This document shows positions 14,431 through 44,292 of a stretch of DNA of 64,000 nucleotides, one piece after another. Position numbers and translations under genes: made by a program. Location: positions 124,001 to 188,000 of IMG/VR virus record IMGVR_UViG_3300042923_000474; one strand, written 5' to 3'. The notes below the pieces were generated by a model. That model had not been told where the DNA came from. It saw only the letters and a list, made by a program, of their open reading frames with translations, and ran no database searches. The first letter of the stretch is position 1. Each line of letters begins with the position of its first letter.

Positions 14431-14611
14431 CAGCATGCAGATCAACCGTGGCCCTAACGATCAGGTGGGCATGGACTGGGAGTGGACTGCCAAAGGCGTA
14501 AGTCGATTGGTAGCCCATGACATCTCAGGCGGTACGTTTACCTACCACGGGTTGGCTAAGCGTGCAACGTTCTATGCTCGCATACCCCCATGGAAAGGAG
14601 ATGGCACGTAA
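14414..14611 (+). CDS. Small hypothetical protein, N-x-Q-like family
   Basis: AAGGA RBS; MILRRNSMQ; TAATG coupling. Confidence 0.6.
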   Translation: MILRRNSMQINRGPNDQVGMDWEWTAKGVSRLVAHDISGGTFTYHGLAKRATFYARIPPWKGDGT

Positions 14612-30832: not shown

Positions 30833-33013
30833 ATGATTTTACACGACGGGGATATTGACCAGTACCCCGGTGCCATTTACGACGTACACACGAGCAATAA
30901 AAGCTTTGTGCGTTATGTGGCGCTGCTGCGAAAGATGGGCGTTAAGAACGCCTACTTCTGTTTGGCCCTGCTGCACCCAGAATTGCAAGGCGTAGACCCG
31001 CACGATCCAAACTTGGATGAACAGACCAAGGTGAAGATCTGGCGGGAGTGTATGGAGAACCCGTGGTACTTCATCCGGGAAGTGATCCGCATTAAAGCGG
31101 GTGACATGATTCCGTACATCGCCAACCGTGGCAACATGGCTTTGATGTGGCTCTTCCTTAACCACATCGACATGTTCCTCATTCAGCCTCGTCAGACCGG
31201 TAAATCGGTGGGGGCTGACTGTTTGATGTTGTGGTTGATTTACTTTGGCTGTTATAACGTCGACATACAGCTAATTACAAAAGACGCCAAGCTTCGAACG
31301 GACAACATCCTTCGACTCAAGGCGATGCGCGACGGCATACCGCAGTGGTTGGTACTCCATTCCAAGGGAGACCCGGACAACACGGAAGAGATTGGTTATG
31401 AAGCGCGGAAGATGCGTTACATTGCAAAGGTACCACGTGCATCTGCCACGGACGCTGAGAAAGTAGGTCGGGGTGCTACCAGTCCGATCCTGCAGTTCGA
31501 CGAAGCACCCTTCATCAACCACATTGGCATTACCCTACCTTCTGCAATGGGTTCCTCTACTCGGGCCCGTGAGAACGCCAGGCGCCTAGGTGCGCCGTAT
31601 GGGGTACTGTACACAACCACGGCAGGCAAGATCGACAGCCGTGATGGTCGTTTCGTTTACGACATGCTGCAAGGCGCTGCAACGTGGAACGAGCGTTACA
31701 TGGATGCTGGTTCTCAAGAGCAGCTTGAGCAGATGATCATGGACCACTGCACGGGCGATGTTCCGCTCATGAACGTGACCATGTCTCACCGTCAGTTGGG
31801 TTACACCGACGAGTGGCTGTGGGAAACCATGGCTCGAAACAAAGCCTACGGCGAGATCGCAGAACGAGACTATATGAACCGCTGGACCAACGGTACCGGT
31901 AGTAACCCTATCGATGCCAAAACCCTGGAACGCATCACCAAGTCTGAGCGTGAGCCGGATTGGGTGGAGTTGTCCAAAGAGGGTTACATGGTCAACTGGT
32001 ACATCGAGAAGGAAAAGATTCAGCAGTTCATGTCCACACGTCGTTTCATCATGGGCCTCGATACGTCCGATGCTATCGGTCGAGATGGTATCGCCATGGT
32101 GATCATCGATACACGGTCTTTGGCTGTGGTGGCTTCGGGTGTGTTCAACCGCACCAACATCTACCGCTGGATCAGTTTCTTGGGTGCGTTCATGCTGGCC
32201 TATCCAACGGTCACGCTCATCCCAGAACGCAAGTCGTCGGCTCAGTCGATTGTGGACGGCCTCATTCAGATTCTGGATGCTGCCGGTGTCGATCCATTCC
32301 GTCGGATCTTCAACCACATCGTCGACAACCGCGAGCGCTACTCGGACGAGTTTGTCAACACCAGCAACTCGCTCATGCGTCGTCGTATGTTCGAAACGCA
32401 CAAGCAGCACTTCGGGTTCAACACCACAGGCGATTCTCGTACTCAGCTCTACGTCAACGTACTCAACAGTGCGCTGGATGATGCTGCTGGCAAGATCCAA
32501 GACAAGAAGCTGTCTGGCGAGTTCAGAAGCCTTGTGGTCAAGAACGGTCGGATCGACCACCAAACTGGCGGGCACGATGACTGCATCATTGCCTACCTCA
32601 TGGCCAACTGGATGTTGCTCCATGCGAAGAACCTCACGCACTACGGCATTCAGAAGTCTGACGTGCGCACCGAGGTGATTAAAGGTAAGGATACCATCTC
32701 TGTACAGGACATGATCAAACAAGACCGTGCCCGTAAGATCCGTGAGCAACTCGATGACCTGTTCATCAAGCTTGGGGATGCAGAGAGTGATGTGGAAGCG
32801 GTTCGCTACGAGCATGAGATCCGTCACGTGATGACGATGTCTGTGGAGATTGGTGAATCGGCTGAGAGTATTCAGGAGTTGATTGACACTGCGACCGTGC
32901 GTCGTCGTGAACGTCTGCGTACTCGCCGCATGGGTGGTTCCATGGGGAATGGGAACTATGGTTGGATGAACAACCGCAGTCAAGGCTACACCCCTCCTCC
33001 AATGACCTGCTGA
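30833..33013 (+). CDS. terL: Terminase large subunit (phiKZ gp25-like)
   Basis: Walker A QPRQTGKS, Walker B LQFDE, coupling motif YTTTAG, nuclease GLDTS and HDD; AGGAG RBS before ATG 30833. Confidence 0.93.
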   Translation: MILHDGDIDQYPGAIYDVHTSNKSFVRYVALLRKMGVKNAYFCLALLHPELQGVDPHDPNLDEQTKVKIWRECMENPWYFIREVIRIKAGDMIPYIANRGNMALMWLFLNHIDMFLIQPRQTGKSVGADCLMLWLIYFGCYNVDIQLITKDAKLRTDNILRLKAMRDGIPQWLVLHSKGDPDNTEEIGYEARKMRYIAKVPRASATDAEKVGRGATSPILQFDEAPFINHIGITLPSAMGSSTRARENARRLGAPYGVLYTTTAGKIDSRDGRFVYDMLQGAATWNERYMDAGSQEQLEQMIMDHCTGDVPLMNVTMSHRQLGYTDEWLWETMARNKAYGEIAERDYMNRWTNGTGSNPIDAKTLERITKSEREPDWVELSKEGYMVNWYIEKEKIQQFMSTRRFIMGLDTSDAIGRDGIAMVIIDTRSLAVVASGVFNRTNIYRWISFLGAFMLAYPTVTLIPERKSSAQSIVDGLIQILDAAGVDPFRRIFNHIVDNRERYSDEFVNTSNSLMRRRMFETHKQHFGFNTTGDSRTQLYVNVLNSALDDAAGKIQDKKLSGEFRSLVVKNGRIDHQTGGHDDCIIAYLMANWMLLHAKNLTHYGIQKSDVRTEVIKGKDTISVQDMIKQDRARKIREQLDDLFIKLGDAESDVEAVRYEHEIRHVMTMSVEIGESAESIQELIDTATVRRRERLRTRRMGGSMGNGNYGWMNNRSQGYTPPPMTC

Positions 33014-33051
33014 CATACGCCCCCTCCCCGTAATGGGGAGGGGGCTATGCC
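33014..33051. terminator. Bidirectional CATA-hairpin-TATGC element
   Basis: CATAC GCCCCCTCCCC GTAAT GGGGAGGGGGC TATGCC, between convergent genes. Confidence 0.8.
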
Positions 33052-33052
33052 G

Positions 33053-34372
33053 TTACCACTTGATGTCTTGGAGCAGTTGAGCGAGAACTTTCTTCTTGTC
33101 CTCGTCGGTGTTGGGGTCGTCCATCTCAGATTGGATCAGAGAACGAACAGCCTTGGCCTCTTCCACGTTAACGCCGTATGCAAAGCGCACCAACGTGTTG
33201 TAGACCGCAATCTCCAAGTTGATCAGGTCAATCATGCGACTGACCATTTTGATGTAGCCCTTGGCGATACCAATGCGGGTTTCCAACGCCTTCTTGAAGT
33301 CGGGCGGCAACTTAACACCCACGTCAGCCAAACGCTTTTCCTGTTTAGGTAAGTCGTTCTTGACCTTGTCGATGTCAGACACCAGTGTCGCGTACTTGTC
33401 AAGCTTCGGTGGTTCGAGCTTACGTTCGCGACGTTTCTCCATGGCCTCCAAGCGAATGGTCAGTTCGTGGTCAGAACGTTCGCTAGGGGCAGTGGCCCAT
33501 TCCAGGAAGATCCTGACTTCCTCATCGCTACCACCGCGCATGCGGCCAGCAATATGCTTGACATACATGGACTCGCAACGGCGACGCAGATAGGTGGCCA
33601 AGTCCTCCATGCTGGACCAGCCGATGAAGGTCGAGTTGGCATGGGCCATCAGGAACTTCGGTGTGATGAGTGAGCTGGAAGAGCTGTTAGCAAACTTCAC
33701 AGCTTCGTCCAAGTAGGGTACCAGTTGACCATGGTATTCTTTCCACACCGACAGCTTGGCTTTCTCCAGCGCATCTTCCAGCGACTTACCGGGCTCCTCC
33801 ATCCCATTGAGGATCAGACCAATGGAGGCGTAGACGTAGTTGGACGGGCGGCTCTCAAGGAAAGCAGCAACCACCTTAGCGCGGGCTTCCTCACGGGCTT
33901 TGCGAGCAGCATCAGCAGCGATGACCTGATCACGTTCAGCCGCATGCATCCGTTCACGCCATGCAGCGTTGGCAGCCACGGACTTCTTGTAGTCGTCATC
34001 CATCTTGGTGTTGATGTCGCTGATCTTCTTCTTGTTGGCATTCATGACCCAGAAGATCAACGTGCCGAAAGCTGCGACGATTGCCACACCGATTGCAACC
34101 TTTACCGCAGTGCTCAGTGCCTCTGTTGCCACCGGGAAGTTGGTGTTGGTCACCTGTGTGGTGAACGACTCCATCGCGATCTGTGGTGGGAGGATGCCTT
34201 TGAACTGGCTGGCCTGCTCCTTGGACACCCCACCTGCTTGCTGGATGGCTTCCAACTGCATCTGGAATTCAGCAGCCCGCTCATTGGCCATTGTTTCCAG
34301 ATCGTCCAACTCCTCGATGCTCATGTTGGCGAGGGATGAAAGATCGACATCGGTCAATCCTGGAATAATCAT
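33053..34372 (-). CDS. Protease-processed internal head (ejection-type) protein with a TM helix
   Basis: Acidic propeptide with AME-SF...TN...ATE-AL, typical of phiKZ-like head paralogues, then a TM segment and coiled coil. Confidence 0.65.
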   Translation of the reverse strand: MIIPGLTDVDLSSLANMSIEELDDLETMANERAAEFQMQLEAIQQAGGVSKEQASQFKGILPPQIAMESFTTQVTNTNFPVATEALSTAVKVAIGVAIVAAFGTLIFWVMNANKKKISDINTKMDDDYKKSVAANAAWRERMHAAERDQVIAADAARKAREEARAKVVAAFLESRPSNYVYASIGLILNGMEEPGKSLEDALEKAKLSVWKEYHGQLVPYLDEAVKFANSSSSSLITPKFLMAHANSTFIGWSSMEDLATYLRRRCESMYVKHIAGRMRGGSDEEVRIFLEWATAPSERSDHELTIRLEAMEKRRERKLEPPKLDKYATLVSDIDKVKNDLPKQEKRLADVGVKLPPDFKKALETRIGIAKGYIKMVSRMIDLINLEIAVYNTLVRFAYGVNVEEAKAVRSLIQSEMDDPNTDEDKKKVLAQLLQDIKW

Positions 34373-34382
34373 GATGGTCCCT

Positions 34383-35708
34383 TTACTTGAAATAGTTCAT
34401 GGTGATTGCACGGACCACGATGTAGAGTTCCAGTGCGGTACGCAGCGAAGCGATTTGGGATTCGGACTTGGACAGCTTGGACTTGCGAACAATCTCTTCC
34501 GCATAAGCACGAGCCTTGATCAAGCCTTGATCCTTCATACGGGAGGCCCCGTACAGGTCTTTGAGTTTGCTAACCAGACCCGCCAGATTGTCCACAGACT
34601 TGACGTCGATGCGGTTGACCTGAATGTAGTCGATAGCGTGCAGCACCAACTCTTCAGCCAGTTCTGCCGTCTTGACCTTGGTCCGACCACTGTGAGCGGT
34701 ACACACCCACTTGAGCAGTTCCCAGAAAAGACCTTCCGATACTGTGCCCACCATTTCACGCACAACCGTAACCACCTCTTCACGGATAAACGTGTTGGGG
34801 TCGTTCATGACAGACTGAATGTACGTCACGTAACGTTTGTTGTCGTTGGTGTTGGACTTGAGCATCAACTCCCCGTCAATGACCAGGGTTGCAGTCGTCG
34901 TACGGATGCGGCCGCCGTTACGGCGAATGTCCATGTGTACTTGGAAGATCTTCTTGACCACTTCACGCAGACGGTCCTGTGGCTCTGTTACAGCGTAGGT
35001 AACACGGCTGTCGGGTGCGTAGTGGGTCACGACGCGAGCGTGGATCGCATTAGGCTTGAGGAAGTCCTCAGCACGCTGTGTGAACCACAGATCCCAACTG
35101 CCTGCCTTCTTGATACCCCACTTGAGGTCCAGCGAGGCGTAGGTGGCTTTGGCTTCTTCGATGCTGGCTGGCTTGTCGTAATAGTGCGACAGAAGGGACG
35201 TGAACAGTTTGACCTGCAACATGTAGAACACGTTGATCTTGGCCTGTTCCTTTTCCTTGATGGTCAGCTTGTTGGAATTATGCAGGCGGTAAAGCAGATA
35301 CAGCGCTGCCGTGTTGTACGGGTCAGACAGACGAGCCCAGTCCGAATCGATCAGTGGGGTCTTGATGATCAGTTGACGAGCATCGTGCTCATCCAAACCC
35401 ATCACGTCTTGAAAGAAGGCATCACGGTCCATCTTGGTGTGACGCACAATCTCAACGCCGAGCAAGTTACCGCCGAAGAAAGCGATGTGGTCTTCGTTCT
35501 TGTTGATGAACCCGGACTTGTATTTGCGGATACGGTCAACCAGATACTTGTCTGCTACCAAGTCAACGCACAGTTCGTCGTAGACCTGTTTAATGGCATC
35601 GCCGGTAGCACCCAATGCTTCCAACGCCATGAGGGGTTCTGGGTTGGTCAGGTGCAGTAAATCGAATTCTTGGTCGAACCCGTAGGTACTCGATTGTTCG
35701 TAGGACAT
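34383..35708 (-). CDS. Conserved jumbo-phage protein, probably virion-associated
   Basis: 441 aa; N-terminal ALEAL candidate cleavage site; NEDHIAFFGGNLLGV block. Confidence 0.65.
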   Translation of the reverse strand: MSYEQSSTYGFDQEFDLLHLTNPEPLMALEALGATGDAIKQVYDELCVDLVADKYLVDRIRKYKSGFINKNEDHIAFFGGNLLGVEIVRHTKMDRDAFFQDVMGLDEHDARQLIIKTPLIDSDWARLSDPYNTAALYLLYRLHNSNKLTIKEKEQAKINVFYMLQVKLFTSLLSHYYDKPASIEEAKATYASLDLKWGIKKAGSWDLWFTQRAEDFLKPNAIHARVVTHYAPDSRVTYAVTEPQDRLREVVKKIFQVHMDIRRNGGRIRTTTATLVIDGELMLKSNTNDNKRYVTYIQSVMNDPNTFIREEVVTVVREMVGTVSEGLFWELLKWVCTAHSGRTKVKTAELAEELVLHAIDYIQVNRIDVKSVDNLAGLVSKLKDLYGASRMKDQGLIKARAYAEEIVRKSKLSKSESQIASLRTALELYIVVRAITMNYFK

Positions 35709-35763
35709 AATGGATTCCCTAGGGAGTTAACTGACTATACGATAAAGACCGGTTTTAACCAGA

Positions 35764-35788
35764 ATTCAAACCTATAATACCTAAGTGA
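35764..35788 (+). promoter_or_regulatory. Putative phage early promoter (copy 3)
   Basis: ATTCAAACCTATAATACCTAAGTGA; core TATAATAC resembles the phiKZ early motif TATATTAC. Confidence 0.7.
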
Positions 35789-35846
35789 ATGACAGTCAAT
35801 AATGATCGTCGTTTAACCTATTCCCAAGTCCTAAGGAGGACACATC

Positions 35847-36731
35847 ATGGAACAAGCGAACATTACTTTCACCGAAGACGCTGAAGGTGCACTGATCTTT
35901 CAATACGCTGGCCGTAAGTATCTCTACGCCGGTCGTAAAGATGGGATCATGTACGGCATCTCCACCGCTCGTAAAGAGTGGAAGGAGTTGCTGGAAGATG
36001 CTGGAAACCGCGAATACGAGAAGGTTGGTAGTCGGGCAGTGGCCATGGGTCTGGACTTTGTGCACTTCGATCTGGGTATCCTCAAGATCGACGTCGTCGC
36101 TAAGTTGACGGATCTGATGGAGACCTACGATGACTTCGAAGGTCTGGGCATTATGACCATCAGCAAAACCGATTGCCGTTCTCCAGACGGCATCACGATC
36201 GGTTTGATCGATGGCATGATCGCCATGGCTCGGGTTCTGCGTAAGGCCAACCTTGGCTCGGCAGAAGTGCAAGAGGCTCTGAAGGACTTCACCACCGATG
36301 AGGATGTGAAGTGGCTGATGGAGCACTCGGTACAGAACTGGGAGTTCGGCGCGGATGCTGACAAGGACTGGGAACTGGGTGATCCACTGCAGGTGGTCAT
36401 CCCTGAGTCGGCCCTTCAGTCGGCTGTGGAGCCTTCCAAAGATGGCAAGTACAAGGTGGAATACTGCCAGAAGACTTGGCCAGCTGGTTGGGATCACGAG
36501 GACTCGACCATCGAGTTTGATAGCCGGGATGAAATGAACACCTGGCTATTGGGGAAGATTGAGTGGTGCAAGTATGAAGATAACGGTTTCCGCTGCCGTG
36601 TCTACTTGTACAAGGACAACTTCCCTCACTCGATCGGTAAGGGCGAGTGGCTCTCTGACCAGTTCGTCAGTGTTGGATTGAGCTGGGTGCCTACCCTGGA
36701 CATCCTCTCCGACATGGAATGGATGAAGTAA
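35847..36731 (+). CDS. Hypothetical acidic protein
   Basis: Strong SD, 294 aa. Confidence 0.8.
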   Translation: MEQANITFTEDAEGALIFQYAGRKYLYAGRKDGIMYGISTARKEWKELLEDAGNREYEKVGSRAVAMGLDFVHFDLGILKIDVVAKLTDLMETYDDFEGLGIMTISKTDCRSPDGITIGLIDGMIAMARVLRKANLGSAEVQEALKDFTTDEDVKWLMEHSVQNWEFGADADKDWELGDPLQVVIPESALQSAVEPSKDGKYKVEYCQKTWPAGWDHEDSTIEFDSRDEMNTWLLGKIEWCKYEDNGFRCRVYLYKDNFPHSIGKGEWLSDQFVSVGLSWVPTLDILSDMEWMK

Positions 36732-36801
36732 CGCCGCAACACCCTAGCCTGCCAATGGTGGTGGGCTAGGATTTATAACCACGTTCTAAGGAGAACACAA
36801 C

Positions 36802-37218
36802 ATGGCTTTCAAAGACTACAACCGCAATCAACTGATCACTGGCCTCGTACTGCTGGCTGTTGTTTTCATCGGCGCAGTTCTGGGTTTCATGTTTGTCTAC
36901 AAGTTCGTAGGCAAGCTGGCTACAACGCTTTTGACGCTGGCAGCGATTGTCTACTACGTGTGGCAATACTTCCACTTCAAGAGCAACGCAAAGGCAAAGG
37001 CCGATTACATCGGTGCCCTGCGTGCGTCTCTGTACAAACAAACTGTCACCAACCATCTGGTGATGATCTTGAACCTGACCAATGTGGCAGCGTTGCTGGC
37101 TCTGGTCATTATGGGTTGGTGGTTCGTGGCGATCTGTGGGGCAGTGATGTCTTACATTACACTGGGGCATGTTCGTGAAGCGGAAGCTTTGCACAATGCT
37201 TCCCTGGCCACCCGCTAA
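36802..37218 (+). CDS. Multi-pass membrane protein
   Basis: About four hydrophobic helices; strong SD. Confidence 0.8.
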   Translation: MAFKDYNRNQLITGLVLLAVVFIGAVLGFMFVYKFVGKLATTLLTLAAIVYYVWQYFHFKSNAKAKADYIGALRASLYKQTVTNHLVMILNLTNVAALLALVIMGWWFVAICGAVMSYITLGHVREAEALHNASLATR

Positions 37219-37265
37219 TCCTTCCTCCACCCGCAACCTCAATCTCATTTTCAAGGAATACAGCC

Positions 37266-37709
37266 ATGCAAAACTTCAACGTTAACACTCTGACCATCCT
37301 CGCCGCCCTGCAAGCTGAAGGCTTCAACGCTCGCCTGGAAAAAGAAGGCGCTTCCAACAAGAAGCACCAACTGCTGGGCGTGGTGGTCTGCTTCGTCGAT
37401 AACGCTGAGCAGTATGTCTGCCCGGCCTACACCGACCTGGCAACGTTTGAACTGAACCCAATCCGTCTGCGTGAAGGCAAACTGATCGTGGGCTCTAGCT
37501 CTGTCGGCACTGCTGACAGCGGTGGTCACAAGTGGTTCGAGTCGATCGCCAAAGACTTCAAAGGTGAACTGTTCCCAGTTTCCCTGGAGCCTGTAACCGA
37601 GGAGTACACTCCTCAACCAATCATCGAGCCAGTCGTGCCGGTGGTGTCCAAAGCTGAAGCTGCGGCCAACGCTTCTGAAGCTGTAAACGCTACCCCAGCG
37701 GCTGCTTGA
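37266..37709 (+). CDS. Hypothetical protein (Y-x-CPA domain)
   Basis: AAGGA RBS; followed by hairpin-TTATGCCC at 37716-37749. Confidence 0.8.
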   Translation: MQNFNVNTLTILAALQAEGFNARLEKEGASNKKHQLLGVVVCFVDNAEQYVCPAYTDLATFELNPIRLREGKLIVGSSSVGTADSGGHKWFESIAKDFKGELFPVSLEPVTEEYTPQPIIEPVVPVVSKAEAAANASEAVNATPAAA

Positions 37710-37804
37710 TGTACAGGGCCTTCCTTCGGGAGGGCCCGCTCTTATGCCCATTCATTTCGAGTGTGCATAAAAGTCTAATCACCAGGTCCTAAGGAGGACT
37801 AGCA

Positions 37805-38923
37805 ATGCGTACACTTAAAGATTACACCGCAGAACAAATCGCTGCTGCCAAAACGTGGATGTCGAATGAGTTGGAGGCGATGTCTGAAGCCAACTACGAC
37901 AAGACCCTGCTGCAGGTGCTGGAATTCCACCACCCAACTGGTCACGTGGAAGACATCCAGCCTGTTGTGATGGCTGCTCCTAAGCCGCTGGAAGGCGAGT
38001 TCCAACAGGGTGAAGAACCTGTGCTGGAAATCTACGGCAAAGAGGATGAAGTCAAGGCCATGCCTGAATTCAGCCAGTCGGGTCCTAAGGAGTTCGAGGA
38101 CAAGGTGGTTCAGCGCCTCATGCTGGCCATGGCTCGTGGTGAAATCAAGCTGGAACTCGATGGCACTCCTGAAGGCAAAGCTCGGGACGCCAAGGTGGTC
38201 AAAGATTACCTGACCCGCAATGCCGCGTACTACCCTCACGAATCCCGTGACGAGTGGTTGCGTGAGAACGGTGGCGTTTCCTCGGATGGCAAGGGCACTT
38301 TGTGGTTTGAATACCCAGGCGATGGCATGAGCGACATCAACCCACCTCGTCCTACCGAACAACACGGGGCTGAATTGGCTGCTCGTTTGGCCAATCAAAA
38401 GTTCCCACTCGACCGTTTCGGTAAACCGGGTAAGGGTGTCGAGGTGACTGTTCATCCCGATCACCTGGTCATGTTGGACAAGCCAGTCTACGTCGAGATA
38501 GACATCTCCAAGCTGGCAGAAGGTGACAGCTACATAACGCCGGACGGCAAGACCTACACCAAGGTGCATGGTCGTATGGTGCCAGCAGACGCCGTGCAGA
38601 CCGCCCTGTCGTCAATTCACCTGGACCGTCCTACCTCCGCTGCTCGTCAGCAAATGCATGAAGGGTCCCGTGCTCAACAGGACCTGACCAAGCCTGCTGG
38701 TCCAACCATTACCACCGGCATGGAGATCTTCATGGACCCGATGTCGATCGCTAAGCGGTTGGTGGGTCCGTGGGATGGTCCGGGCTGGGACAAGGGCATG
38801 GATGAAAAGGTGCGTCAGGAACGTTTGGAGTTGTTCGAGACCTACTTCGCCAATCGTCATCCTGATCTGTCCCGCGGTAAAGATGTAAAGCTGCACATCG
38901 TCCCTGTAAAGAAAGACGATTAA
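37805..38923 (+). CDS. Hypothetical protein
   Basis: Strong SD, 372 aa. Confidence 0.8.
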   Translation: MRTLKDYTAEQIAAAKTWMSNELEAMSEANYDKTLLQVLEFHHPTGHVEDIQPVVMAAPKPLEGEFQQGEEPVLEIYGKEDEVKAMPEFSQSGPKEFEDKVVQRLMLAMARGEIKLELDGTPEGKARDAKVVKDYLTRNAAYYPHESRDEWLRENGGVSSDGKGTLWFEYPGDGMSDINPPRPTEQHGAELAARLANQKFPLDRFGKPGKGVEVTVHPDHLVMLDKPVYVEIDISKLAEGDSYITPDGKTYTKVHGRMVPADAVQTALSSIHLDRPTSAARQQMHEGSRAQQDLTKPAGPTITTGMEIFMDPMSIAKRLVGPWDGPGWDKGMDEKVRQERLELFETYFANRHPDLSRGKDVKLHIVPVKKDD

Positions 38924-38955
38924 TCAACACATACCCACGTCCTAAGGAGGACAAG

Positions 38956-39825
38956 ATGTCTAAAGAACAACGTGCACTGATCGATTCCCTGACCCCAGAG
39001 AATCGCAACATCCTGCTACTCTTGCAAATGCGCATGGGTTGCTACATGGATGGTGAGATTGAGTTCTGTAGGCGAGTGAATGTTATCCGCAACAATGGGG
39101 TCGAATACCTGTGCCCGGCTCGTAACCCTTCGATCTATAAAGGGATCGCCACTCAGCCGCTCGTACTCAATGCCTTCGGAGAGATCATTCTGGCTAATGA
39201 GACTGTGACCATCGGTGGTGCCCCTGTGTATGTCGGTTCGCTGGACATCATGGTGGGTGCCGCTGAGTTGCAAGAAGGCATGCGCCGTAACTCGGTAGAG
39301 CGTCGTAAGGTTGCGTCCACTCCGTTGATGGGTGGTCGTCGCATTACGGATGGGCCGGGTGTTAACCCGTTGTCACAGTTGGGAGAGGGCATCGAACTTC
39401 CAGTAGGTGGTCGAGATGCTCGTAAGTTCCGCAATGTTACCGTTGGCGAAATGGACCCTCTTCCAGATCGCTCTGACGTAGTGATCTCCCTGGATCGTCA
39501 TCGACCACTTCGCCAGAGTCCTATTCGGATTCATGGCGAGTCTGAGATCAACACTGAACGCTTAGGGCTTAATCTGAACCCAGAAGTGTTGGCGTCCATT
39601 AACAGCTTCATCGGTGAAGAATCTCGCAGTGCCTCGGCATCGCTGGCAAAGAACATGATGCCGCTGAGCGATTCGGAATACTTCAATCGCAAGATGCAGC
39701 TCCCTGGCTACACCCCACCTAAGTTCAGCTTCTGGACTCGGATGGGTTGGAAGTGGGAAAGCTTCAAGGAACGTGTGGCAGAAAGCCGTGTTGGCCAGTT
39801 CTTCCGCAATCTGTTTAATCGTTAA
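38956..39825 (+). CDS. Hypothetical protein (N-terminal Y-x-CPA domain, amphipathic C-terminus)
   Basis: Strong SD, 289 aa. Confidence 0.8.
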   Translation: MSKEQRALIDSLTPENRNILLLLQMRMGCYMDGEIEFCRRVNVIRNNGVEYLCPARNPSIYKGIATQPLVLNAFGEIILANETVTIGGAPVYVGSLDIMVGAAELQEGMRRNSVERRKVASTPLMGGRRITDGPGVNPLSQLGEGIELPVGGRDARKFRNVTVGEMDPLPDRSDVVISLDRHRPLRQSPIRIHGESEINTERLGLNLNPEVLASINSFIGEESRSASASLAKNMMPLSDSEYFNRKMQLPGYTPPKFSFWTRMGWKWESFKERVAESRVGQFFRNLFNR

Positions 39826-39852
39826 TTATTCCCAAGTCCTAAGGAGGACACA

Positions 39853-40050
39853 ATGGTTTCTGTTAAAGGTATCGCTACTCTGGTTCTCGGCATGGTTGTG
39901 GGTGGTGTGATTGTGAGCAACTCGACACTGATCCAAGGTAAGCCTGCGGTTACTCCGGCTGAAGAAGTTGTCACCGGTCACCGCGTTTCCCCTCTGGGTC
40001 AAGAGATGCTCACCTACAAAGGTGCGCGTACTCAGATCGTTGCACTCTAA
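39853..40050 (+). CDS. Small protein with an N-terminal TM/signal segment
   Basis: Strong SD; GIATLVLGMVVGGVIV. Confidence 0.75.
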   Translation: MVSVKGIATLVLGMVVGGVIVSNSTLIQGKPAVTPAEEVVTGHRVSPLGQEMLTYKGARTQIVAL

Positions 40051-40074
40051 TCACTTACTACCCGGAGAGATACC

Positions 40075-40473
40075 ATGGACCTGTTTGACGTAGTAGAAGT
40101 TGCAGCCACCACTCGCCGCATGAAATTCCAAGACGACTGGTTTACCGGTTGCTGTGGCATGCAAGCGTTTGCGCATGCAGTAATTCCAGATACAGTACCG
40201 GGTGATGTCCTCTTCACCCACGCACCTAGCGGCAACCGTACCATTGCTGTGGTAACGCCGCTGGGCAATGTGATCCTGCAGGAGATGGAGCGCGATGCGC
40301 GCCAAGTGCTCCTGTGGTCCACCAAACTCTTGGAGGGTTTGTGGGGCAAGGGTCTCATCCCTGAAGATCAGCTGGAATCCCTGCTTGGTCTTTGGGGGAA
40401 AGATAACGTTGGCATTCGCATTCAGCAGATGCTCAACCAGCAAACCAACATCCATGAAACCAAAGGAGGTTGA
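40075..40473 (+). CDS. Hypothetical protein
   Basis: GGAG RBS, 132 aa. Confidence 0.7.
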   Translation: MDLFDVVEVAATTRRMKFQDDWFTGCCGMQAFAHAVIPDTVPGDVLFTHAPSGNRTIAVVTPLGNVILQEMERDARQVLLWSTKLLEGLWGKGLIPEDQLESLLGLWGKDNVGIRIQQMLNQQTNIHETKGG

Positions 40474-40474
40474 C

Positions 40475-40822
40475 ATGGTCAGCAACAACACAGCAGTCCT
40501 TTATATTCGCAACCCCGATGAGAACTCCCGCGAACGCCACATCGCTGTCGATGACGATCCCAAGTGGATCGCCAAAGTCAAGTACGTCCTCGACAACGGC
40601 GCTGAGTATGCAGATCTTGTAGGTCCGCTGCTCGTGGCCCACGACGTACCGGGTGGCGGTCGCATGATGTTCTACCCGCTGCCGTACATCTTCCGCAGTG
40701 AGCGTGAGCGTGCAGCAGCGGCTGCTCGCCATGGCAAAACCCCACCGCCTGAATCCTGGGTTCAGCGGAAGGTTCGTGTACTGCAGAAAGTGTTTGGTCG
40801 TCAAGACCCACAGGCCGCCTAA
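40475..40822 (+). CDS. Hypothetical protein
   Basis: AAGGAGGT RBS before ATG 40475. Confidence 0.75.
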   Translation: MVSNNTAVLYIRNPDENSRERHIAVDDDPKWIAKVKYVLDNGAEYADLVGPLLVAHDVPGGGRMMFYPLPYIFRSERERAAAAARHGKTPPPESWVQRKVRVLQKVFGRQDPQAA

Positions 40823-40862
40823 ATCTTAAGGCGGCGCATTCCCCATGTCCTAAGGAGGACAA

Positions 40863-41234
40863 GTGATGAAGTCGATCCGTGAAAACGTAATGGAAACGAA
40901 ACTCCACCATACCGAACGTACAGTTGTAGACGGCATGGTGTTGGCACATGGCTTGTTGGGTTCGTGCAGAGCCTGGCAGCAAGATGCCATTCAACAAGGT
41001 GATGTCGGGGAGACGCATACGCGCCTGCTGCATGACCTTGCTTTTCTGTTGCACTGCATGCCTAAGGAAGAAGCCAACGCAACGCTCACCAATCTGGAGA
41101 GTCATGGTTTCTTGGTTGGGTGTGAGCAGGAGACTTCTCGTGTAGCCATTGCGTGTGATGGTCACCAGTTGTCCGCTGTCATTACCCGCGAGCAGGCGCT
41201 GGCGTACCACACAAACAATCTCACCACTCACTGA
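40863..41234 (+). CDS. Hypothetical protein
   Basis: SD hairpin upstream; start GTG 40863 or ATG 40866. Confidence 0.7.
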   Translation: MMKSIRENVMETKLHHTERTVVDGMVLAHGLLGSCRAWQQDAIQQGDVGETHTRLLHDLAFLLHCMPKEEANATLTNLESHGFLVGCEQETSRVAIACDGHQLSAVITREQALAYHTNNLTTH

Positions 41235-41251
41235 CCCGATAAGGAGGACGC

Positions 41252-41749
41252 ATGAACAAGCTTGTAGATGTAACGTCCTCCATCATCGCGCAACATTACG
41301 GCCTTGCCTGGCATGGACACTCACTGACTCTCAAGCGATGGGGGTCAGTGGGTTGCCTGTCCAGTTTATTTTTTGTCTCCGTGTTCGATGGTTTGGTTTT
41401 AGTGGACCGTGTCAATGTGTCAGCCGAAGAGCAAGGGATGCGTCTTAAGCTCCCAAGCTTTCACATCTCCCCTCGGATGATCAATCAGATCTCAGGCAAT
41501 GTTCACCGCGTTTGGTATCTGGTAGCTGATGGGGAATTGTTCTGGATCAAAGACCGTGACTTCGATCGGTTGCTGCACCGCGTCAGGATTACCATTGTGG
41601 GGGATGACATGAATCACTTTGAACAGGACGTCATCGGTCCTGACATCGAGATTCGACAAGACTACATTCCGGGGCGTGGCAGACAACGTCGCGATTACTG
41701 GAAGAACCACCTCAATCGAAAACCCAGACCCGTCCTAGTGGCGTCATAA
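41252..41749 (+). CDS. Hypothetical protein
   Basis: TAAGGAGG RBS; followed by a terminator at 41745-41796. Confidence 0.7.
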   Translation: MNKLVDVTSSIIAQHYGLAWHGHSLTLKRWGSVGCLSSLFFVSVFDGLVLVDRVNVSAEEQGMRLKLPSFHISPRMINQISGNVHRVWYLVADGELFWIKDRDFDRLLHRVRITIVGDDMNHFEQDVIGPDIEIRQDYIPGRGRQRRDYWKNHLNRKPRPVLVAS

Positions 41750-41881
41750 ACCCTCTCCCATTACGGGAGAGGGGATCTATGCTGTCTTTTTTTTTTGTGT
41801 CGTGGTGGCTCATTGATGCCAGTTTTGCTTGGGTTAATCTATGTAGTACCTTGTTAATCCCCTTATGTACGGAGTTTACCC

Positions 41882-42271
41882 ATGCCTCTAGCATTGGTTG
41901 AACGCATCGAGTCAACGAATCAATCCAGGTTTGTTCTGGACGGCAGAGGTCCCTCTGCTGCTCAGTATTGGGGCGACTATCGTGGTCTTGAGGCCATGCT
42001 CTCTGAACGGCATAGCACGGCGCTGTACATGGCGCACGCTGCTAAGGAAAGGGGTGAACTAGACAGGAAGTTCTCGACCGACATTCCCCAACGTGTCCTG
42101 AACGACTACATTGTCCAAGCACCCTCGATTCTGCGCAAGCTGGACAGAGATATCAAAAACATCATTGATGCAGGAGGAGCCGACGCCATAGTGTACTTGA
42201 AAACACTATCCACGGTGAGAGGCGCGTTGACGGAAACGATCACGCACTTTGGCCGTATCGTAGGAACCTGA
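41882..42271 (+). CDS. Hypothetical protein
   Basis: GGAG RBS, 129 aa. Confidence 0.65.
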   Translation: MPLALVERIESTNQSRFVLDGRGPSAAQYWGDYRGLEAMLSERHSTALYMAHAAKERGELDRKFSTDIPQRVLNDYIVQAPSILRKLDRDIKNIIDAGGADAIVYLKTLSTVRGALTETITHFGRIVGT

Positions 42272-42273
42272 CC

Positions 42274-42720
42274 ATGACTGTACTTGTCACTTATCAAAGC
42301 GTGTTCGACGCCCAAGCACAAGCGTTGGTCGTCACGGTGAACTGTGTCGGTGTGATGGGTAAAGGGGTTGCAGAGATTTGCAAACGCCGTTATCCGTTGG
42401 TGTTCATCGACTATGTACGCCGGTGTAGAAGTGGCAAGGTTAAACCTGGTCGCATCAGCAACGAGGATTGTTACCAATTACCTGATGGGCGATACATCAT
42501 CCTGTTCCCCACCAAGAATCATTGGCGACGTAATACTGAAGCCTGTTGGGTTGAGACTGGCCTAGCGGATCTTCTGCTCCACTGCCACCGTCTGAGCCTA
42601 GACGACGTGGCACTTCCTCCCCCTGGCTGCGGTAATGGCGGCTTGGAACTGACCGAGGTACAGCCGATGATCGACCTCATGTTTGAGGACGAAGACATTG
42701 AAGTTACCTTATGTATATAG
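42274..42720 (+). CDS. Macrodomain ADP-ribosyl-glycohydrolase (DarG/TARG1-like)
   Basis: VNCVGVMGKGVA, LFPTKNHWR, ALPPPGCGNGGL. Confidence 0.88.
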   Translation: MTVLVTYQSVFDAQAQALVVTVNCVGVMGKGVAEICKRRYPLVFIDYVRRCRSGKVKPGRISNEDCYQLPDGRYIILFPTKNHWRRNTEACWVETGLADLLLHCHRLSLDDVALPPPGCGNGGLELTEVQPMIDLMFEDEDIEVTLCI

Positions 42721-42989
42721 ACGCGTTGCTGCGGCTAGATCCTTACCCTGAGGAGTTGACCAGCGATCTGGGAATACCAGACATGGTTGGCGAGACGGGT
42801 GCGGCGGTGGGCTTTGTGTCCTTTCACCACCGCAAGTTGTACAAGGCTAGTTATCCCCCGATGGCTAGGTTGTGCAGCCTACAGAGCATGGGGGCGTCCC
42901 GCCCTTGCCCGCCCCACCCCCGTGCTCTGTGGGGTGCTTTCCTCATCGCACCAGTGTTTAGGCCGGCCTTCGGGTCGGCCTTTATGCCC
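42718..42989 (+). ncRNA. Candidate ~245-nt structured RNA followed by a terminator
   Basis: Nested helices found by eye (see findings); ORFs here lack RBSs and have poor composition. Confidence 0.35.
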
Positions 42990-43041
42990 ACACCCATTCT
43001 ATGCGACACCCCAGTCGTAGTTAACCCCAAAGGAGACACCC

Positions 43042-43560
43042 ATGAAAATTGATGTGGCCAAAACGGCACAGGAAAACCTGATCGCGCTGATCGTTGCCGC
43101 TAACCCCGGCAAAGAGTTGGCAGCCAATCAGTTCACCGCAGCCGCTCCTGTCGTCATCCCAGACGACGCTGGCCGCAACACCACCATCACTCTGTCCGCT
43201 GTTGTTGGTCAGGGCTACGGTGCTGGTGATGCGACCTTCAAATACACCCGTCTGTCCCTGGCTGGTGTGAACGTTACCCCTGTCACCAGCGTTCGCGTTG
43301 TTGACGGTGATGACGAGGCTGCTACCCTGACCAAAGTGCTCGCTGCTACCGGCATTCTGGCCAGCGAAGTTGATGCGTCGGATTACAACGCACCGACCGA
43401 TGATTCGGTTCCGGGCATGATCACTCTGACCCCGAAAGCAGGTTCCACCCTGTACGTCGGCGAAGAAGTGGTTATCGAACTGACCTGGGCCGCTGAAGCA
43501 GAGCCTACTCTGGGCGAAACCTTCACCGTGACCGATCTGGACGGCTTCGAACCCGCCTAA
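43042..43560 (+). CDS. Virion fibre/decoration paralogue (Y-x-R-x-x-L family)
   Basis: RNTTITL...FKYTRLSL...; C-terminal PTLGETFTVTDLDGFEPA. Confidence 0.75.
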   Translation: MKIDVAKTAQENLIALIVAANPGKELAANQFTAAAPVVIPDDAGRNTTITLSAVVGQGYGAGDATFKYTRLSLAGVNVTPVTSVRVVDGDDEAATLTKVLAATGILASEVDASDYNAPTDDSVPGMITLTPKAGSTLYVGEEVVIELTWAAEAEPTLGETFTVTDLDGFEPA

Positions 43561-43573
43561 GTCGTAATTGCGA

Positions 43574-43610
43574 CATAAACCCCCGGCCTGTTGAGGGCCG
43601 GGGGTTTATG
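43574..43610. terminator. Perfect bidirectional CATAAA-hairpin-TTTATG element
   Basis: CATAAACCCCCGGCC-TGTTGAG-GGCCGGGGGTTTATG, a 15-bp perfect inverted repeat between convergent genes. Confidence 0.85.
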
Positions 43611-43611
43611 C

Positions 43612-44292
43612 TCACGCTGGTTCAAACCCGTTAAGGTTCTTGACATCAAACACATCAGCCAAAGTCGGCAGCGACCCCATCGAGACGAAACTACCCGCCA
43701 CGAAGAAGTAGCTGTCCTTGTTGGCAACCAGATAGATCGTGTTGGCTGTAACCTTACACTTGGTCAGGTCAAAGTCAGCATCTTCTACCAGAATGCCTTT
43801 GGCACGGATTGCAGCGATCACCGCAGCAACGTTGGCGTAGTCCTTAGGTACCAGTTTCAGTGCAGCCAACACGTTGATGTAACGACGGTTGTAAACAACT
43901 TGCACCGGTACACGGTAGGCACTGGTTTCTGTGGGGGAGATGGTCACAGTGGTTTGAGCACCGGAGCCATTCGCCACGGGTTTACCAATGGTCAGCGTGT
44001 TCCAGTCTGGCTGCACCGTCATCTTGCGAGCGGTCATGGTCTTGAAGTTATCCAAGCCCGTGATGTCAAACGGCAATGTAACAAAGCCATCAGCCACCTG
44101 GGAAACCAGAACCCGGACACCTTGAAGCTTGGCGAGGGGTATCACGTTCTGGGCAACCAACATCCGCGCTTGGGCAACCCGCACCTGAGGATTGGGCTGT
44201 TCGATCACAATCCCTTGGATCGAGAACAGGTCCGTCCCTATGCGGTCCTTTTCAATGACCACACCTTGCAATGTAAACAGATCAGTATCCAT
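43612..44292 (-). CDS. Virion fibre paralogue with four N-terminal ~17-aa repeats
   Basis: TDLFTLQGVVIE / TDLFSIQGIVIE / VRVAQARMLVAQ / AKLQGVRVLVSQ; YNRR; tail LADVFDVKNLNGFEPA. Confidence 0.75.
   Translation of the reverse strand: MDTDLFTLQGVVIEKDRIGTDLFSIQGIVIEQPNPQVRVAQARMLVAQNVIPLAKLQGVRVLVSQVADGFVTLPFDITGLDNFKTMTARKMTVQPDWNTLTIGKPVANGSGAQTTVTISPTETSAYRVPVQVVYNRRYINVLAALKLVPKDYANVAAVIAAIRAKGILVEDADFDLTKCKVTANTIYLVANKDSYFFVAGSFVSMGSLPTLADVFDVKNLNGFEPA

What the first reader, a model, noticed from the sequence alone, without database searches (positions are those of the whole stretch)
35828..40861. Six genes share an SD-occluding hairpin with a compensatory base-pair change: a probable translational operator regulon
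Seen: GTCCT-AAGG-AGGAC at 35828, 37786, 38939, 39836 and 40847, and GTTCT-AAGG-AGAAC at 36783. In that copy C-G becomes T-A, preserving the 5-bp stem while weakening the SD. All copies follow a C-rich stretch (TTCCCAAGTCCTAAGGAGGACAC is identical at 35821 and 39829) and sit 2-5 nt before start codons. I saw it only in this early island. Established: AGGA/GGA-loop hairpins over SDs are the binding mode of CsrA/RsmA, and phage translational repressors use similar operators. Inference: coordinated post-transcriptional control of this cassette by a host or phage RNA-binding protein. The repeats might also act as recombination points for gene-cassette shuffling.
Basis: partly seen in the sequence, partly recalled or inferred. 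Interest (0 to 1): 0.72.

Follow-up and report, generated by a model that had tools for sequence, protein, structure and literature searches.

The report
Covarying ribosome-site hairpin in early phage genes
A short RNA hairpin holding the ribosome-binding site recurs before ten early genes of an uncultured giant phage and its relatives, and its pairing is kept by matched mutations, so it is a real shared translation-start element whose exact job (most likely coordinated translational control) is still untested.

Summary
All six copies are at the stated coordinates, with 0 expected by chance. The window lies in a 231.7-kb phiKZ-like jumbo phage from IMG/VR that carries 10 copies. All are on the coding strand, 2-6 nt before start codons, in two operons that begin at early-promoter-like motifs.

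At least three related uncultured lineages carry the same element. Their stems differ (GTCCT, GTTCT, GATCT, ATCCT, TTTCT, AGTCT, TCCCT, ACTCT) but are always matched by the complementary 3' arm. Three copies have G.U wobbles. Orthologous leaders keep the hairpin although their proteins are only 31-58% identical. This is an RNA structure under selection.

"SD-occluding" overstates it. The hairpin is weak (-0.9 to -5.5 kcal/mol), half of the SD sits in the loop, and these SDs are predicted to be no more paired than those of other genes. A fixed 5' flank (TATnCCCAn) belongs to the module.

The phage encodes no CsrA or RegA homologue, and the fit to the CsrA/Rsm consensus is only partial. Two gene-cassette indels between relatives are bounded by motif copies.

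Best reading: a shared translational operator needing a trans factor (0.35). The main rival is a cis-only structured ribosome-binding site (0.3). The closest analogue is the start-associated sequence (SAS) of cluster K mycobacteriophages, whose function is also unknown.

The parts
35820..35841 (+). Module copy 1: 5' flank ATTCCCAA plus hairpin GTCCT-AAGG-AGGAC (35828-35841). It is the RBS of ORF 35847-36731 (294 aa, unknown function).
   Evidence: hairpin probability 0.97 in context; orthologues in G001, G002 and G005 keep it
36775..36796 (+). Module copy 2: flank ATAACCAC plus hairpin GTTCT-AAGG-AGAAC (36783-36796). It is the RBS of ORF 36802-37218 (138 aa, predicted membrane protein).
   Evidence: orthologous leaders have GATCT/AGATC (G001), GTTCT-AGG-AGAAC (G005) and GTTCA-AAGG-AGAAC (G002)
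37778..37799 (+). Module copy 3: flank ATCACCAG plus hairpin GTCCT-AAGG-AGGAC (37786-37799). It is the RBS of ORF 37805-38923 (372 aa).
   Evidence: the homology of G001, G002 and an RNA-library contig breaks at 37800-37807
38931..38952 (+). Module copy 4: flank ATACCCAC plus hairpin GTCCT-AAGG-AGGAC (38939-38952). It is the RBS of ORF 38956-39825 (289 aa).
   Evidence: the G005 orthologue has ATCCT/AGGAT and the G001 orthologue has loop TAGG
39828..39849 (+). Module copy 5: flank ATTCCCAA plus hairpin GTCCT-AAGG-AGGAC (39836-39849). It is the RBS of ORF 39853-40050 (65 aa, phrog_15989).
40839..40860 (+). Module copy 6: flank TTCCCCAT plus hairpin GTCCT-AAGG-AGGAC (40847-40860). It is the RBS of ORF 40866-41234 (122 aa; a GTG at 40863 is an alternative start).
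   Evidence: the G001 orthologue has loop AGGG
35752..35781 (+). Early-promoter-like motif heading the operon: a T-rich TTTTAAC block, then AACCTATAATACC at 35769-35781.
   Evidence: At least 9 related sites in G000, all on the + strand. It is conserved before the first gene in G001 and G005. The type agrees with the AT-rich -10 motifs of vRNAP early promoters (PMC7598289, PMC8244752). Promoter function is inferred.
35788..35813 (+). Predicted leader hairpin between the promoter-like motif and module copy 1.
   Evidence: fold; a similar hairpin occurs in the cluster-1 leader at G000 92480-92505 and in G002 and G005
36743..36778 (+). Terminator-like 12-bp hairpin (36743-36770) plus ATTTATAA, directly before module copy 2.
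   Evidence: similar GC-rich hairpins followed by TTTAT(A/G) precede several copies in G000, G001 and G002
37716..37746 (+). Terminator-like hairpin (37716-37737, loop TTCG) plus GCTCTTATG after ORF 37266-37709.
   Evidence: TTTATG/TTATGC is enriched in 18-20 upstream regions
40814..40835 (+). Hairpin GCCGCC...GGCGGC spanning the stop codon of ORF 40475-40822, 11 nt before module copy 6.
   Evidence: conserved in G001 and G005
41240..41249 (+). Control case: the SD TAAGGAGGAC of ORF 41252-41749 has no complementary 5' arm.

Best explanation
The element is an RNA module of about 25 nt, TATnCCCAn followed by a hairpin with a 5-bp stem and a 4-nt loop. The hairpin carries the Shine-Dalgarno sequence: AAGG in the loop and AG(G/A)AC as the 3' arm. 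It serves as the ribosome-binding site of nearly all independently initiated genes in two early operons of a phiKZ-like jumbo phage clade.

Shown: the copies, their position, the selected sense-strand pairing, and the restriction to these operons.

Inferred: it acts as a shared translational operator. On its own the hairpin is too weak to stop a ribosome that gains -9 to -12 kcal/mol from SD pairing, so these mRNAs are translated well when the hairpin is free. A trans-acting RNA-binding factor is proposed to recognise the fixed geometry (flank, closing pairs and loop, with stem sequence free to covary). By locking the hairpin it would switch the whole set off, or on, together. I think the factor is most likely a phage protein made after the first minutes of infection. 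This resembles T4 RegA in logic and the MS2 or PP7 operators in the way they are recognised.
For: Copies and position.

Covariation:
- Sites were chosen blind to the outer three pairs, using the CC flank, the CT-N-AGG-AG core and a nearby start codon. Of 45 such sites, 42 have three Watson-Crick pairs, with 7 different arm sequences.
- Pair types seen are GC/AU/UA/GU, UA/AU/CG/GC/UG and CG/UA.
- G.U wobble copies show that the sense RNA strand, not duplex DNA, is what is selected.

Orthologous leaders keep or compensate the stem at 31-58% protein identity.

Geometry is nearly fixed across three lineages. The loop is 4 nt in all but one copy, and the flank CCA has fixed spacing in 10 of 10 G000 copies.

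The hairpin is the dominant local fold, with probability 0.9-0.98 in 8 of 10 copies. It is weak compared with SD:anti-SD pairing, so repression would need a partner.

Restriction to two of at least 9 early-promoter-like operons. In the G004 lineage four copies lie about 20 nt behind the promoter-like motif.
Against: - No binding factor is identified. The genome gives no Pfam match to CsrA, RegA, S1 or S21, and the operon genes have no informative matches.
- No expression or ribosome data exist. The public runs are kept as contigs only and give no 5' ends.
- SD strength and hairpin strength change together, so the net energy is about -6 to -7 kcal/mol in all three variants computed. A purely cis balance explains this equally well.
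- CCCA just 5' of the SD is mildly enriched at other genes too (13 seen against 5.5 expected), so the flank may be a general context rather than a contact.
- Restriction to two operons could reflect spread of cassettes by recombination rather than a regulatory class.
Confidence: 0.35

Rival explanations
1. Cis-only structured ribosome-binding site. The hairpin needs no partner. It holds a very strong SD in a defined fold with AAGG exposed in the loop. This insulates initiation from neighbouring GC-rich terminator stems and sets a gene-specific rate. Because stability rises on cooling, it may also make translation temperature-dependent.
For: SD pairedness in hairpin genes is not above that of other genes (0.45 against 0.57). 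Net SD-minus-hairpin energy is nearly constant across variants. Gene B keeps a weak stem and a weaker SD in all four genomes, while genes A, E, F and I keep the strong one. Predicted stability rises from -4.9 kcal/mol at 37 C to -7.9 at 15 C for this soil and wastewater phage. Many copies directly follow strong terminator-like hairpins.
Against: A simple tuner could drift in loop size, register and arm position. Instead the geometry and the unpaired CCA flank are almost invariant across lineages whose proteins are only 31-58% identical. Other operons of the same genome manage without it.
Confidence: 0.3
2. Transcript-end element. The conserved flank marks a start site of the non-virion RNA polymerase or an endonuclease cut, and the hairpin then sits at or near the 5' end and stabilises each cassette's mRNA.
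For: Several copies lie 8-12 nt after terminator-like hairpins, where a downstream gene would need a new 5' end. The first stem base is a purine in 40 of 42 copies. Jumbo-phage non-virion polymerase promoters are very short and overlap the start site (PMC7598289).
Against: In the G004 lineage and in two G000 copies an early-promoter-like motif lies 20-75 nt upstream. There the flank is inside the 5' UTR and leaves a single-stranded 5' tail of 10 nt or more. Every copy keeps SD-to-start spacing. A 5-bp stem protects poorly. No T7-type polymerase was found, although the control genomes did not ring either. phiKZ 5' UTRs are mostly 31-40 nt (PMC8244752).
Confidence: 0.1
3. Host CsrA/RsmA-type protein binds the GGA of the hairpin and represses these early genes.
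For: AAGGA, which matches ANGGA, lies at the apex of a stem-loop over the SD. This is the general recognition mode of CsrA/Rsm (bioRxiv 10.1101/2020.08.24.265819). GTCCT copies carry two adjacent GGA.
Against: The loop has 4 nt, not 6, and the A of GGA is the closing pair. CANGGAYG is not matched. Loop variants TAGG and AGG lose the first A of ANGGA. The conserved CCA flank has no role in CsrA binding. The phage has no CsrA gene. The host is unknown. The motif is not enriched in bacterial genomes, with 6 scattered matches in 185,579 species genomes.
Confidence: 0.08
4. Chiefly a recombination module, like the PeSL cassettes of T4-type phages. The repeated 14-25 nt serve as homology for gain, loss and exchange of orphan-gene cassettes, and the RNA structure is secondary.
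For: The extra gene in G001 cluster 1 and the extra gene X in G002 are each one motif-to-motif unit. G000/G002 homology runs from 35824 to 36796, hairpin to hairpin. Contigs of other strains diverge right after 37800. The genes are orphans in variable regions.
Against: Recombination does not explain the compensatory stem changes, the G.U wobbles or the fixed SD spacing. Breakpoints at gene borders are expected in any mosaic phage. The repeats are short for homologous recombination.
Confidence: 0.07

Closest known systems
Start-associated sequences (SAS) of cluster K mycobacteriophages (Pope et al. 2011, PMC3203893; PMC12699233)
   Same: A short asymmetric repeat of 13-14 nt containing the SD core, with complementary outer bases. 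It sits 3-7 nt before start codons, in one orientation, in 10-20 copies, only among non-structural genes. It is conserved across sub-lineages before unrelated genes, is absent from the host genome, and has conserved positions that cannot pair with 16S rRNA. Its function is still unknown.
   Different: The sequence is unrelated (GGGATAGGAGCCC), and the hosts and phage families differ. No covariation has been reported for SAS, whereas here the pairing is shown by many compensatory changes. There is no equivalent of the 17-bp ESAS inverted repeats; the upstream hairpins here are ordinary terminator-like stems of varying sequence.
Phage translational operators (MS2/PP7 coat-protein hairpins, T4 gp43 and RegA targets; review PMC3014915)
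   Same: A small hairpin or site over the SD or start codon. The stem sequence is free while geometry and loop are fixed. As with RegA, many early genes are controlled together.
   Different: No repressor has been found. RegA sites are unstructured. The MS2, PP7 and gp43 operators are single sites, not a 10-copy family.
CsrA/RsmA binding hairpins
   Same: GGA at the apex of a short stem-loop overlapping the SD.
   Different: The loop has 4 nt, GGA is half in the stem, the SELEX consensus is not met, and the extra conserved 5' flank is unexplained.
PeSL promoter/stem-loop cassettes of T4-type phages (PMC2839356, PMC4122927)
   Same: Repeated regulatory sequence between orphan genes in variable early regions, with indels bounded by copies.
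   Different: PeSLs are about 100 bp with a sigma-70 promoter and a terminator. This element is an RBS hairpin without a recognisable promoter, in a phage that carries its own polymerases.
RNA thermometers (ROSE, fourU)
   Same: The SD is paired with a short upstream pyrimidine arm, and stability is strongly temperature-dependent.
   Different: Only 5 bp, with half of the SD in the loop. No Rfam match. There is a multi-copy family in one genome.

Membership tests
CsrA/RsmA target site | ANGGA in the apical loop of a stem-loop at or near the SD | tested here: inconclusive
   AAGGA is present, but its last A is the closing pair. The loop variants TAGG and AGG give UAGGA. Definition.
CsrA/RsmA target site | High-affinity consensus CANGGAYG in a hexaloop | tested here: not met
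   The sequence is CUAAGGAG in a tetraloop: GGA is shifted by one and the Y position is G.
CsrA/RsmA target site | A CsrA-family protein is present (phage or host) and binds | not testable with these tools
   No CsrA Pfam match in the phage. The host is unknown and binding cannot be tested.
Mycobacteriophage SAS | Consensus GGGATAGGAGCCC with at most 2 mismatches | tested here: not met
   The consensus here is GTCCTAAGGAGGAC. Definition.
Mycobacteriophage SAS | A repeat containing the SD core, 3-7 nt before start codons, in one orientation, restricted to non-structural genes | tested here: met
   All 10 G000 copies are on the + strand, 2-6 nt before starts, in two clusters of orphan genes.
Mycobacteriophage SAS | About half of the copies preceded by conserved 17-bp inverted repeats (ESAS) | tested here: not met
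   The upstream hairpins are terminator-like and differ in sequence.
PeSL cassette | Sigma-70-type early promoter joined to a terminator stem-loop | tested here: not met
   No such promoter lies within the module. The phage-type promoter-like motif lies upstream of only 2 of 10 copies.
PeSL cassette | Copies flank orphan genes, and indels between relatives end in copies | tested here: met
   Two indels of one motif-to-motif unit and hairpin-to-hairpin homology.
T4 RegA regulon | A RegA (Translat_reg) protein is encoded | tested here: not met
   No PF01818 match.
Any Rfam family | Match to a curated covariance model | tested here: not met
   No match at E <= 1 in window 33000-44000.
Structured RNA element (general) | Base pairs kept by changes on both sides in independent sequences | tested here: met
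   Three of five pairs covary, 8 Watson-Crick arm types occur, and 3 copies have wobbles.

The most novel reading that the evidence does not exclude
The module is the address label of a dedicated post-transcriptional regulon in phiKZ-like jumbo phages. A phage-encoded RNA-binding protein would read flank plus hairpin on early mRNAs and time their translation, or their hand-over from the early compartment to ribosomes. That would be the first sequence-defined translational regulon in this phage group.
Probability: 0.3. Interest if true: 0.75.

Novelty: new variant of a known kind. Interest (0 to 1): 0.55.

Why it matters
Gene expression in phiKZ-like jumbo phages has been studied almost entirely at the level of their unusual RNA polymerases and promoters. 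Nothing sequence-specific is known about translational control. The one conserved mRNA-binding protein studied, ChmC, binds near start codons without a known motif (PMC11077065).

This element is a compact RNA structure with strong comparative support that marks a defined subset of early genes, so it offers a concrete handle for study. It can be moved into reporters, used as bait for a binding protein, and used to predict early genes in uncultured relatives.

It is also a covariation-backed counterpart to the still unexplained start-associated sequences of mycobacteriophages. That suggests structured, repeated ribosome-binding sites may be a recurrent phage device.

Tried and rejected
- **Cultured relatives.** Megablast of the region against cultured phages gave no match. 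A 33-nt leader query gave only chance partial matches.
- **Bacterial genomes.** A scan for the 18-nt motif gave 6 scattered MAG matches, at or below chance, with no clue to the host.
- **Rfam.** Nothing.
- **Candidate protein partners.** Pfam searches of the genome for CsrA, RegA, S21, S1 and T7-type RNA polymerase were all negative. For T7-type polymerase the control genomes also did not ring, so that result is uninformative.
- **Gene functions.** PHROG and Pfam scans of the 17 operon genes gave only families of unknown function, plus a 28-residue match to an RNA polymerase beta PHROG that I treat as noise. The protein atlas gave no usable hit for genes A and E.
- **Public runs.** 24 runs hold the phage or relatives, but all are stored as contigs, so no transcript ends could be read. 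An apparent 965-nt 'skip' in X6 is the paralogous cluster-1 leader laid on the window, not a deletion.
- **Other early leaders.** The other early-promoter leaders were folded to see whether SD hairpins are general. Only weak 3-4 bp pairings were found.
- **CCA pairing with the start region.** G at +4 occurs in 14 of 42 copies, which is not enriched, so this was rejected.
- **Pseudoknot.** I considered flank CC pairing with loop GG, which would complete an anti-SD mimic. I rejected it as unlikely on geometry (my own reasoning, not computed), because the 2-nt linker would have to span a 7-bp helix.
- **T3/T7-type promoters.** A likeness of the module to these promoters is superficial and off register, so I rejected it.
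- **Distant homologues.** The gene A matches in L037 and L038 are domain-level only and gave no usable leader.

Full report
**What the window is.** The window is bases 124001-188000 of a 231,724-bp IMG/VR virus record with direct terminal repeats. It encodes a 1451-aa multisubunit RNA polymerase beta-type protein (phrog_3148), a tail sheath, a large terminase and virion proteins typical of phiKZ-like jumbo phages. The tail sheath is at most 38% identical to cultured relatives, which include Xanthomonas, Serratia, Klebsiella, Erwinia and Pseudomonas jumbo phages such as 201phi2-1 and Goslar. The lineage is therefore uncultured. Its words occur in soil, wastewater, leaf-litter and plant runs.

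**The observation.** They end 3-5 nt before the start codons of ORFs 35847, 36802, 37805, 38956, 39853 and 40866. The whole genome has ten copies. The other four lie at 90860, 92523, 92891 and 93773, outside the window; three of the ten have the T-A variant and one has loop TAGG. A covariance model built from the family finds exactly these ten. The 5' arm is not explained by the SD. Of 37 genes with an AAGGAG SD, nine have the arm, and the tenth copy has TAGGAG. The gene at 41252 has the same TAAGGAGGAC without it. No other 12-mer is repeated at gene starts.

**Is the pairing selected?** Yes.
- An exact-pattern scan of IMG/VR found related jumbo-phage contigs. Whole-record searches found 11, 9, 3, 9 and 6 copies in G001, G002, G003, G004 and G005.
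- The arms differ between copies but stay complementary: GTCCT/AGGAC, GTTCT/AGAAC, GATCT/AGATC, ATCCT/AGGAT, TTTCT/AGAAA, AGTCT/AGACT, TCCCT/AGGGA and ACTCT/AGAGT. Three copies have G.U or U.G wobbles: GTTCT/AGAAT, ATTCT/AGAGT and GCCCT/AGGGT.
- I chose sites without looking at the outer three pairs, requiring only CC at -4/-3, the core CT-N-AGG-AG and a start codon within 8 nt. Of 45 such sites, 42 have three Watson-Crick pairs, with seven arm types. Chance is 1 in 64 per site. The majority type is over-sampled because one scan contained it; the minority types were not selected.
- On the 42-copy alignment the three outer pairs show GC/AU/UA/GU, UA/AU/CG/GC/UG and CG/UA. The two inner pairs are invariant because their 3' partners are the SD. 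That alignment was filtered for pairing, so only the pair types are informative, not the percentage paired.
- The hairpin is kept or compensated in orthologous leaders whose proteins are 31-58% identical. Gene B has GTTCT, GATCT, GTTCT with a 3-nt loop, and GTTCA. Gene E has GTCCT and ATCCT. The gene at 90877 has GTTCT and GTCCT.
- Wobble pairs would be C.A mismatches on the other strand, so the sense RNA is what is selected.

**Anatomy.**
- The module is longer than the hairpin. T at -7, C at -4, C at -3 and A at -2 are conserved, and CCA is present in 10 of 10 G000 copies found without regard to the flank. The flank consensus is TATnCCCAn. G is almost absent from -11 to -2, and A is preferred just after the stem.
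- The loop is AAGG, with rare TAGG, AGGG or AGG.
- The hairpin forms with probability 0.9-0.98 in 8 of 10 copies when folded in 114-nt context.
- It is weak. Energies at 37 C are -4.9 (GTCCT), -2.5 (GTTCT) and -2.9 (GATCT) kcal/mol; across all nine variants computed they run from -5.5 (TCCCT) to -0.9 (wobble copies). Pairing of the SD with a canonical 16S tail gives -12.0 or -9.1 (the tail sequence is textbook knowledge and the host is unknown).
- Predicted pairedness of the SD is 0.45 in hairpin genes against 0.57 in the other 206 genes scored. So 'occluding' overstates it: half of the SD is displayed in the loop.
- SD strength and stem strength change together, leaving a net of about -6 to -7 kcal/mol in all variants.

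**Context.**
- A motif of the type T-rich block, then AAACCTA(a/t)A(a/t)TA(c/t)C, occurs at nine or more sites, all on the + strand, upstream of gene clusters. It is conserved before the first gene of the window's cluster in G001 and G005.
- It fits the description of jumbo-phage virion-polymerase early promoters: an AT-rich conserved block near -10 with T-rich sequence upstream (PMC7598289, PMC8244752).
- Both hairpin clusters start at such motifs (G000 89423/92463 and 159769). In the G004 lineage four copies lie about 20 nt behind one.
- A distant homologue of the 90877 gene in Klebsiella phage Eowyn also sits behind a TATATTAC-type motif. Its leader has CCCA and an SD but no arm.
- 'Early' is thus a well-founded inference, not a measurement.
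- Only two of the nine or more such operons use the hairpin. Within them, 10 of 13 genes with an upstream gap of 27 nt or more have it, and none of the closely coupled genes do.
- Several copies directly follow GC-rich terminator-like hairpins ending in TTTAT(A/G).
- All operon genes are orphans or belong to PHROGs of unknown function. Two are small membrane proteins.

**Mosaicism.**
- G001 has one extra unit in cluster 1 (motif, gene, terminator) inserted exactly between two motif positions. G002 has an extra such unit between the promoter leader and gene A.
- DNA homology between G000 and G002 runs from 35824 to 36796, that is from one hairpin to the end of the next.
- Contigs from other samples diverge just after 37800.
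- This fits PeSL-like cassette exchange (PMC2839356). However, breakpoints at gene borders are common in phages, and recombination cannot explain the covariation.

**Mechanism.** What is shown is an RNA hairpin under selection that is part of the ribosome-binding site of a defined gene set. Everything beyond that is inference.
- I favour a translational operator read by a trans factor (0.35). The geometry and the unpaired flank are held fixed while the stem sequence is free, which is how protein-bound hairpins evolve. The hairpin is also too weak to regulate by itself.
- The cis-only alternative (0.3) is nearly as good. It explains the constant net energy and the gene-specific stem strength, and it predicts temperature dependence, with -6.6 kcal/mol at 25 C and -7.9 at 15 C.
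- A transcript-end role (0.1) is weakened by the copies that sit inside 5' UTRs behind promoter-like motifs.
- CsrA/RsmA (0.08) fits only loosely.
- Recombination as the primary role (0.07) is unlikely, though it is probably a real side effect.

**Comparison and novelty.** No Rfam family matches and no cultured phage has the motif. The nearest described thing is the start-associated sequence of cluster K mycobacteriophages. It has the same position, copy number, orientation, restriction to non-structural genes and unknown function, but an unrelated sequence and no reported covariation. I therefore class this as a new variant of a known kind: repeated start-associated or operator-like RBS elements of phages. 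It is the first case I could find in phiKZ-like phages, and one with unusually clear structural support.

Noticed in passing
window 35752-35781; also G000 10675, 59018, 89423, 92463, 115692, 191006, 207009, 222333: A conserved motif (T-rich block, then AAACCTA-A-TA-C, then TGA-rich) occurs at nine or more sites, all on the + strand, upstream of gene clusters. It is probably the virion-polymerase early promoter of this phage. The G004 lineage has the variant AACCTATATTACC.
   Followed up: partly
window 38082-38095: A partial copy, GTCCTAAGGAGTTC, lies inside ORF 37805-38923. It shares 11 nt with the motif but its 3' arm is not complementary. It may be a chance SD-like stretch, an internal start, or a relic.
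   Followed up: no
window 41240-41251: The next gene in the operon (41252-41749, phrog_14072) has the same SD, TAAGGAGGAC, but no 5' arm. It is a natural control for reporter tests.
   Followed up: partly
genome-wide; e.g. window 36771-36778 and 37738-37746: TTTATG or TTATGC after GC-rich hairpins is 9-13-fold enriched in 18-20 upstream regions. It is probably the U-tract of this phage's terminators. It also resembles the TATG late-promoter core reported for phiKZ.
   Followed up: no
window 14570-14610 (G000 138570-138610): The leader of the gene at G000 138611 has the flank ATACCCCCAT and a predicted 4-bp stem, CCAU...AUGG, that holds the SD AAAGGAG in its loop. This is another case of an SD displayed in a loop.
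   Followed up: partly
G000 10694-10742 (outside the window): In another early-type leader, a 6-bp stem GTTCGT/ACGAAC encloses the SD in a 20-nt loop and ends at the start codon.
   Followed up: no
window 35500-41200 in public runs: Near relatives of this phage (38-54% of sampled words) occur in runs labelled as single organisms and in wastewater, leaf-litter and plant metagenomes. A culturable host-phage pair may therefore exist.
   Followed up: no
L045 1400-1476 (Klebsiella phage Eowyn): A distant homologue of the hairpin gene at G000 90877 lies behind a TTTATATTAC motif. It has CCCA upstream of its SD but no hairpin, so the arm is specific to the clade.
   Followed up: partly
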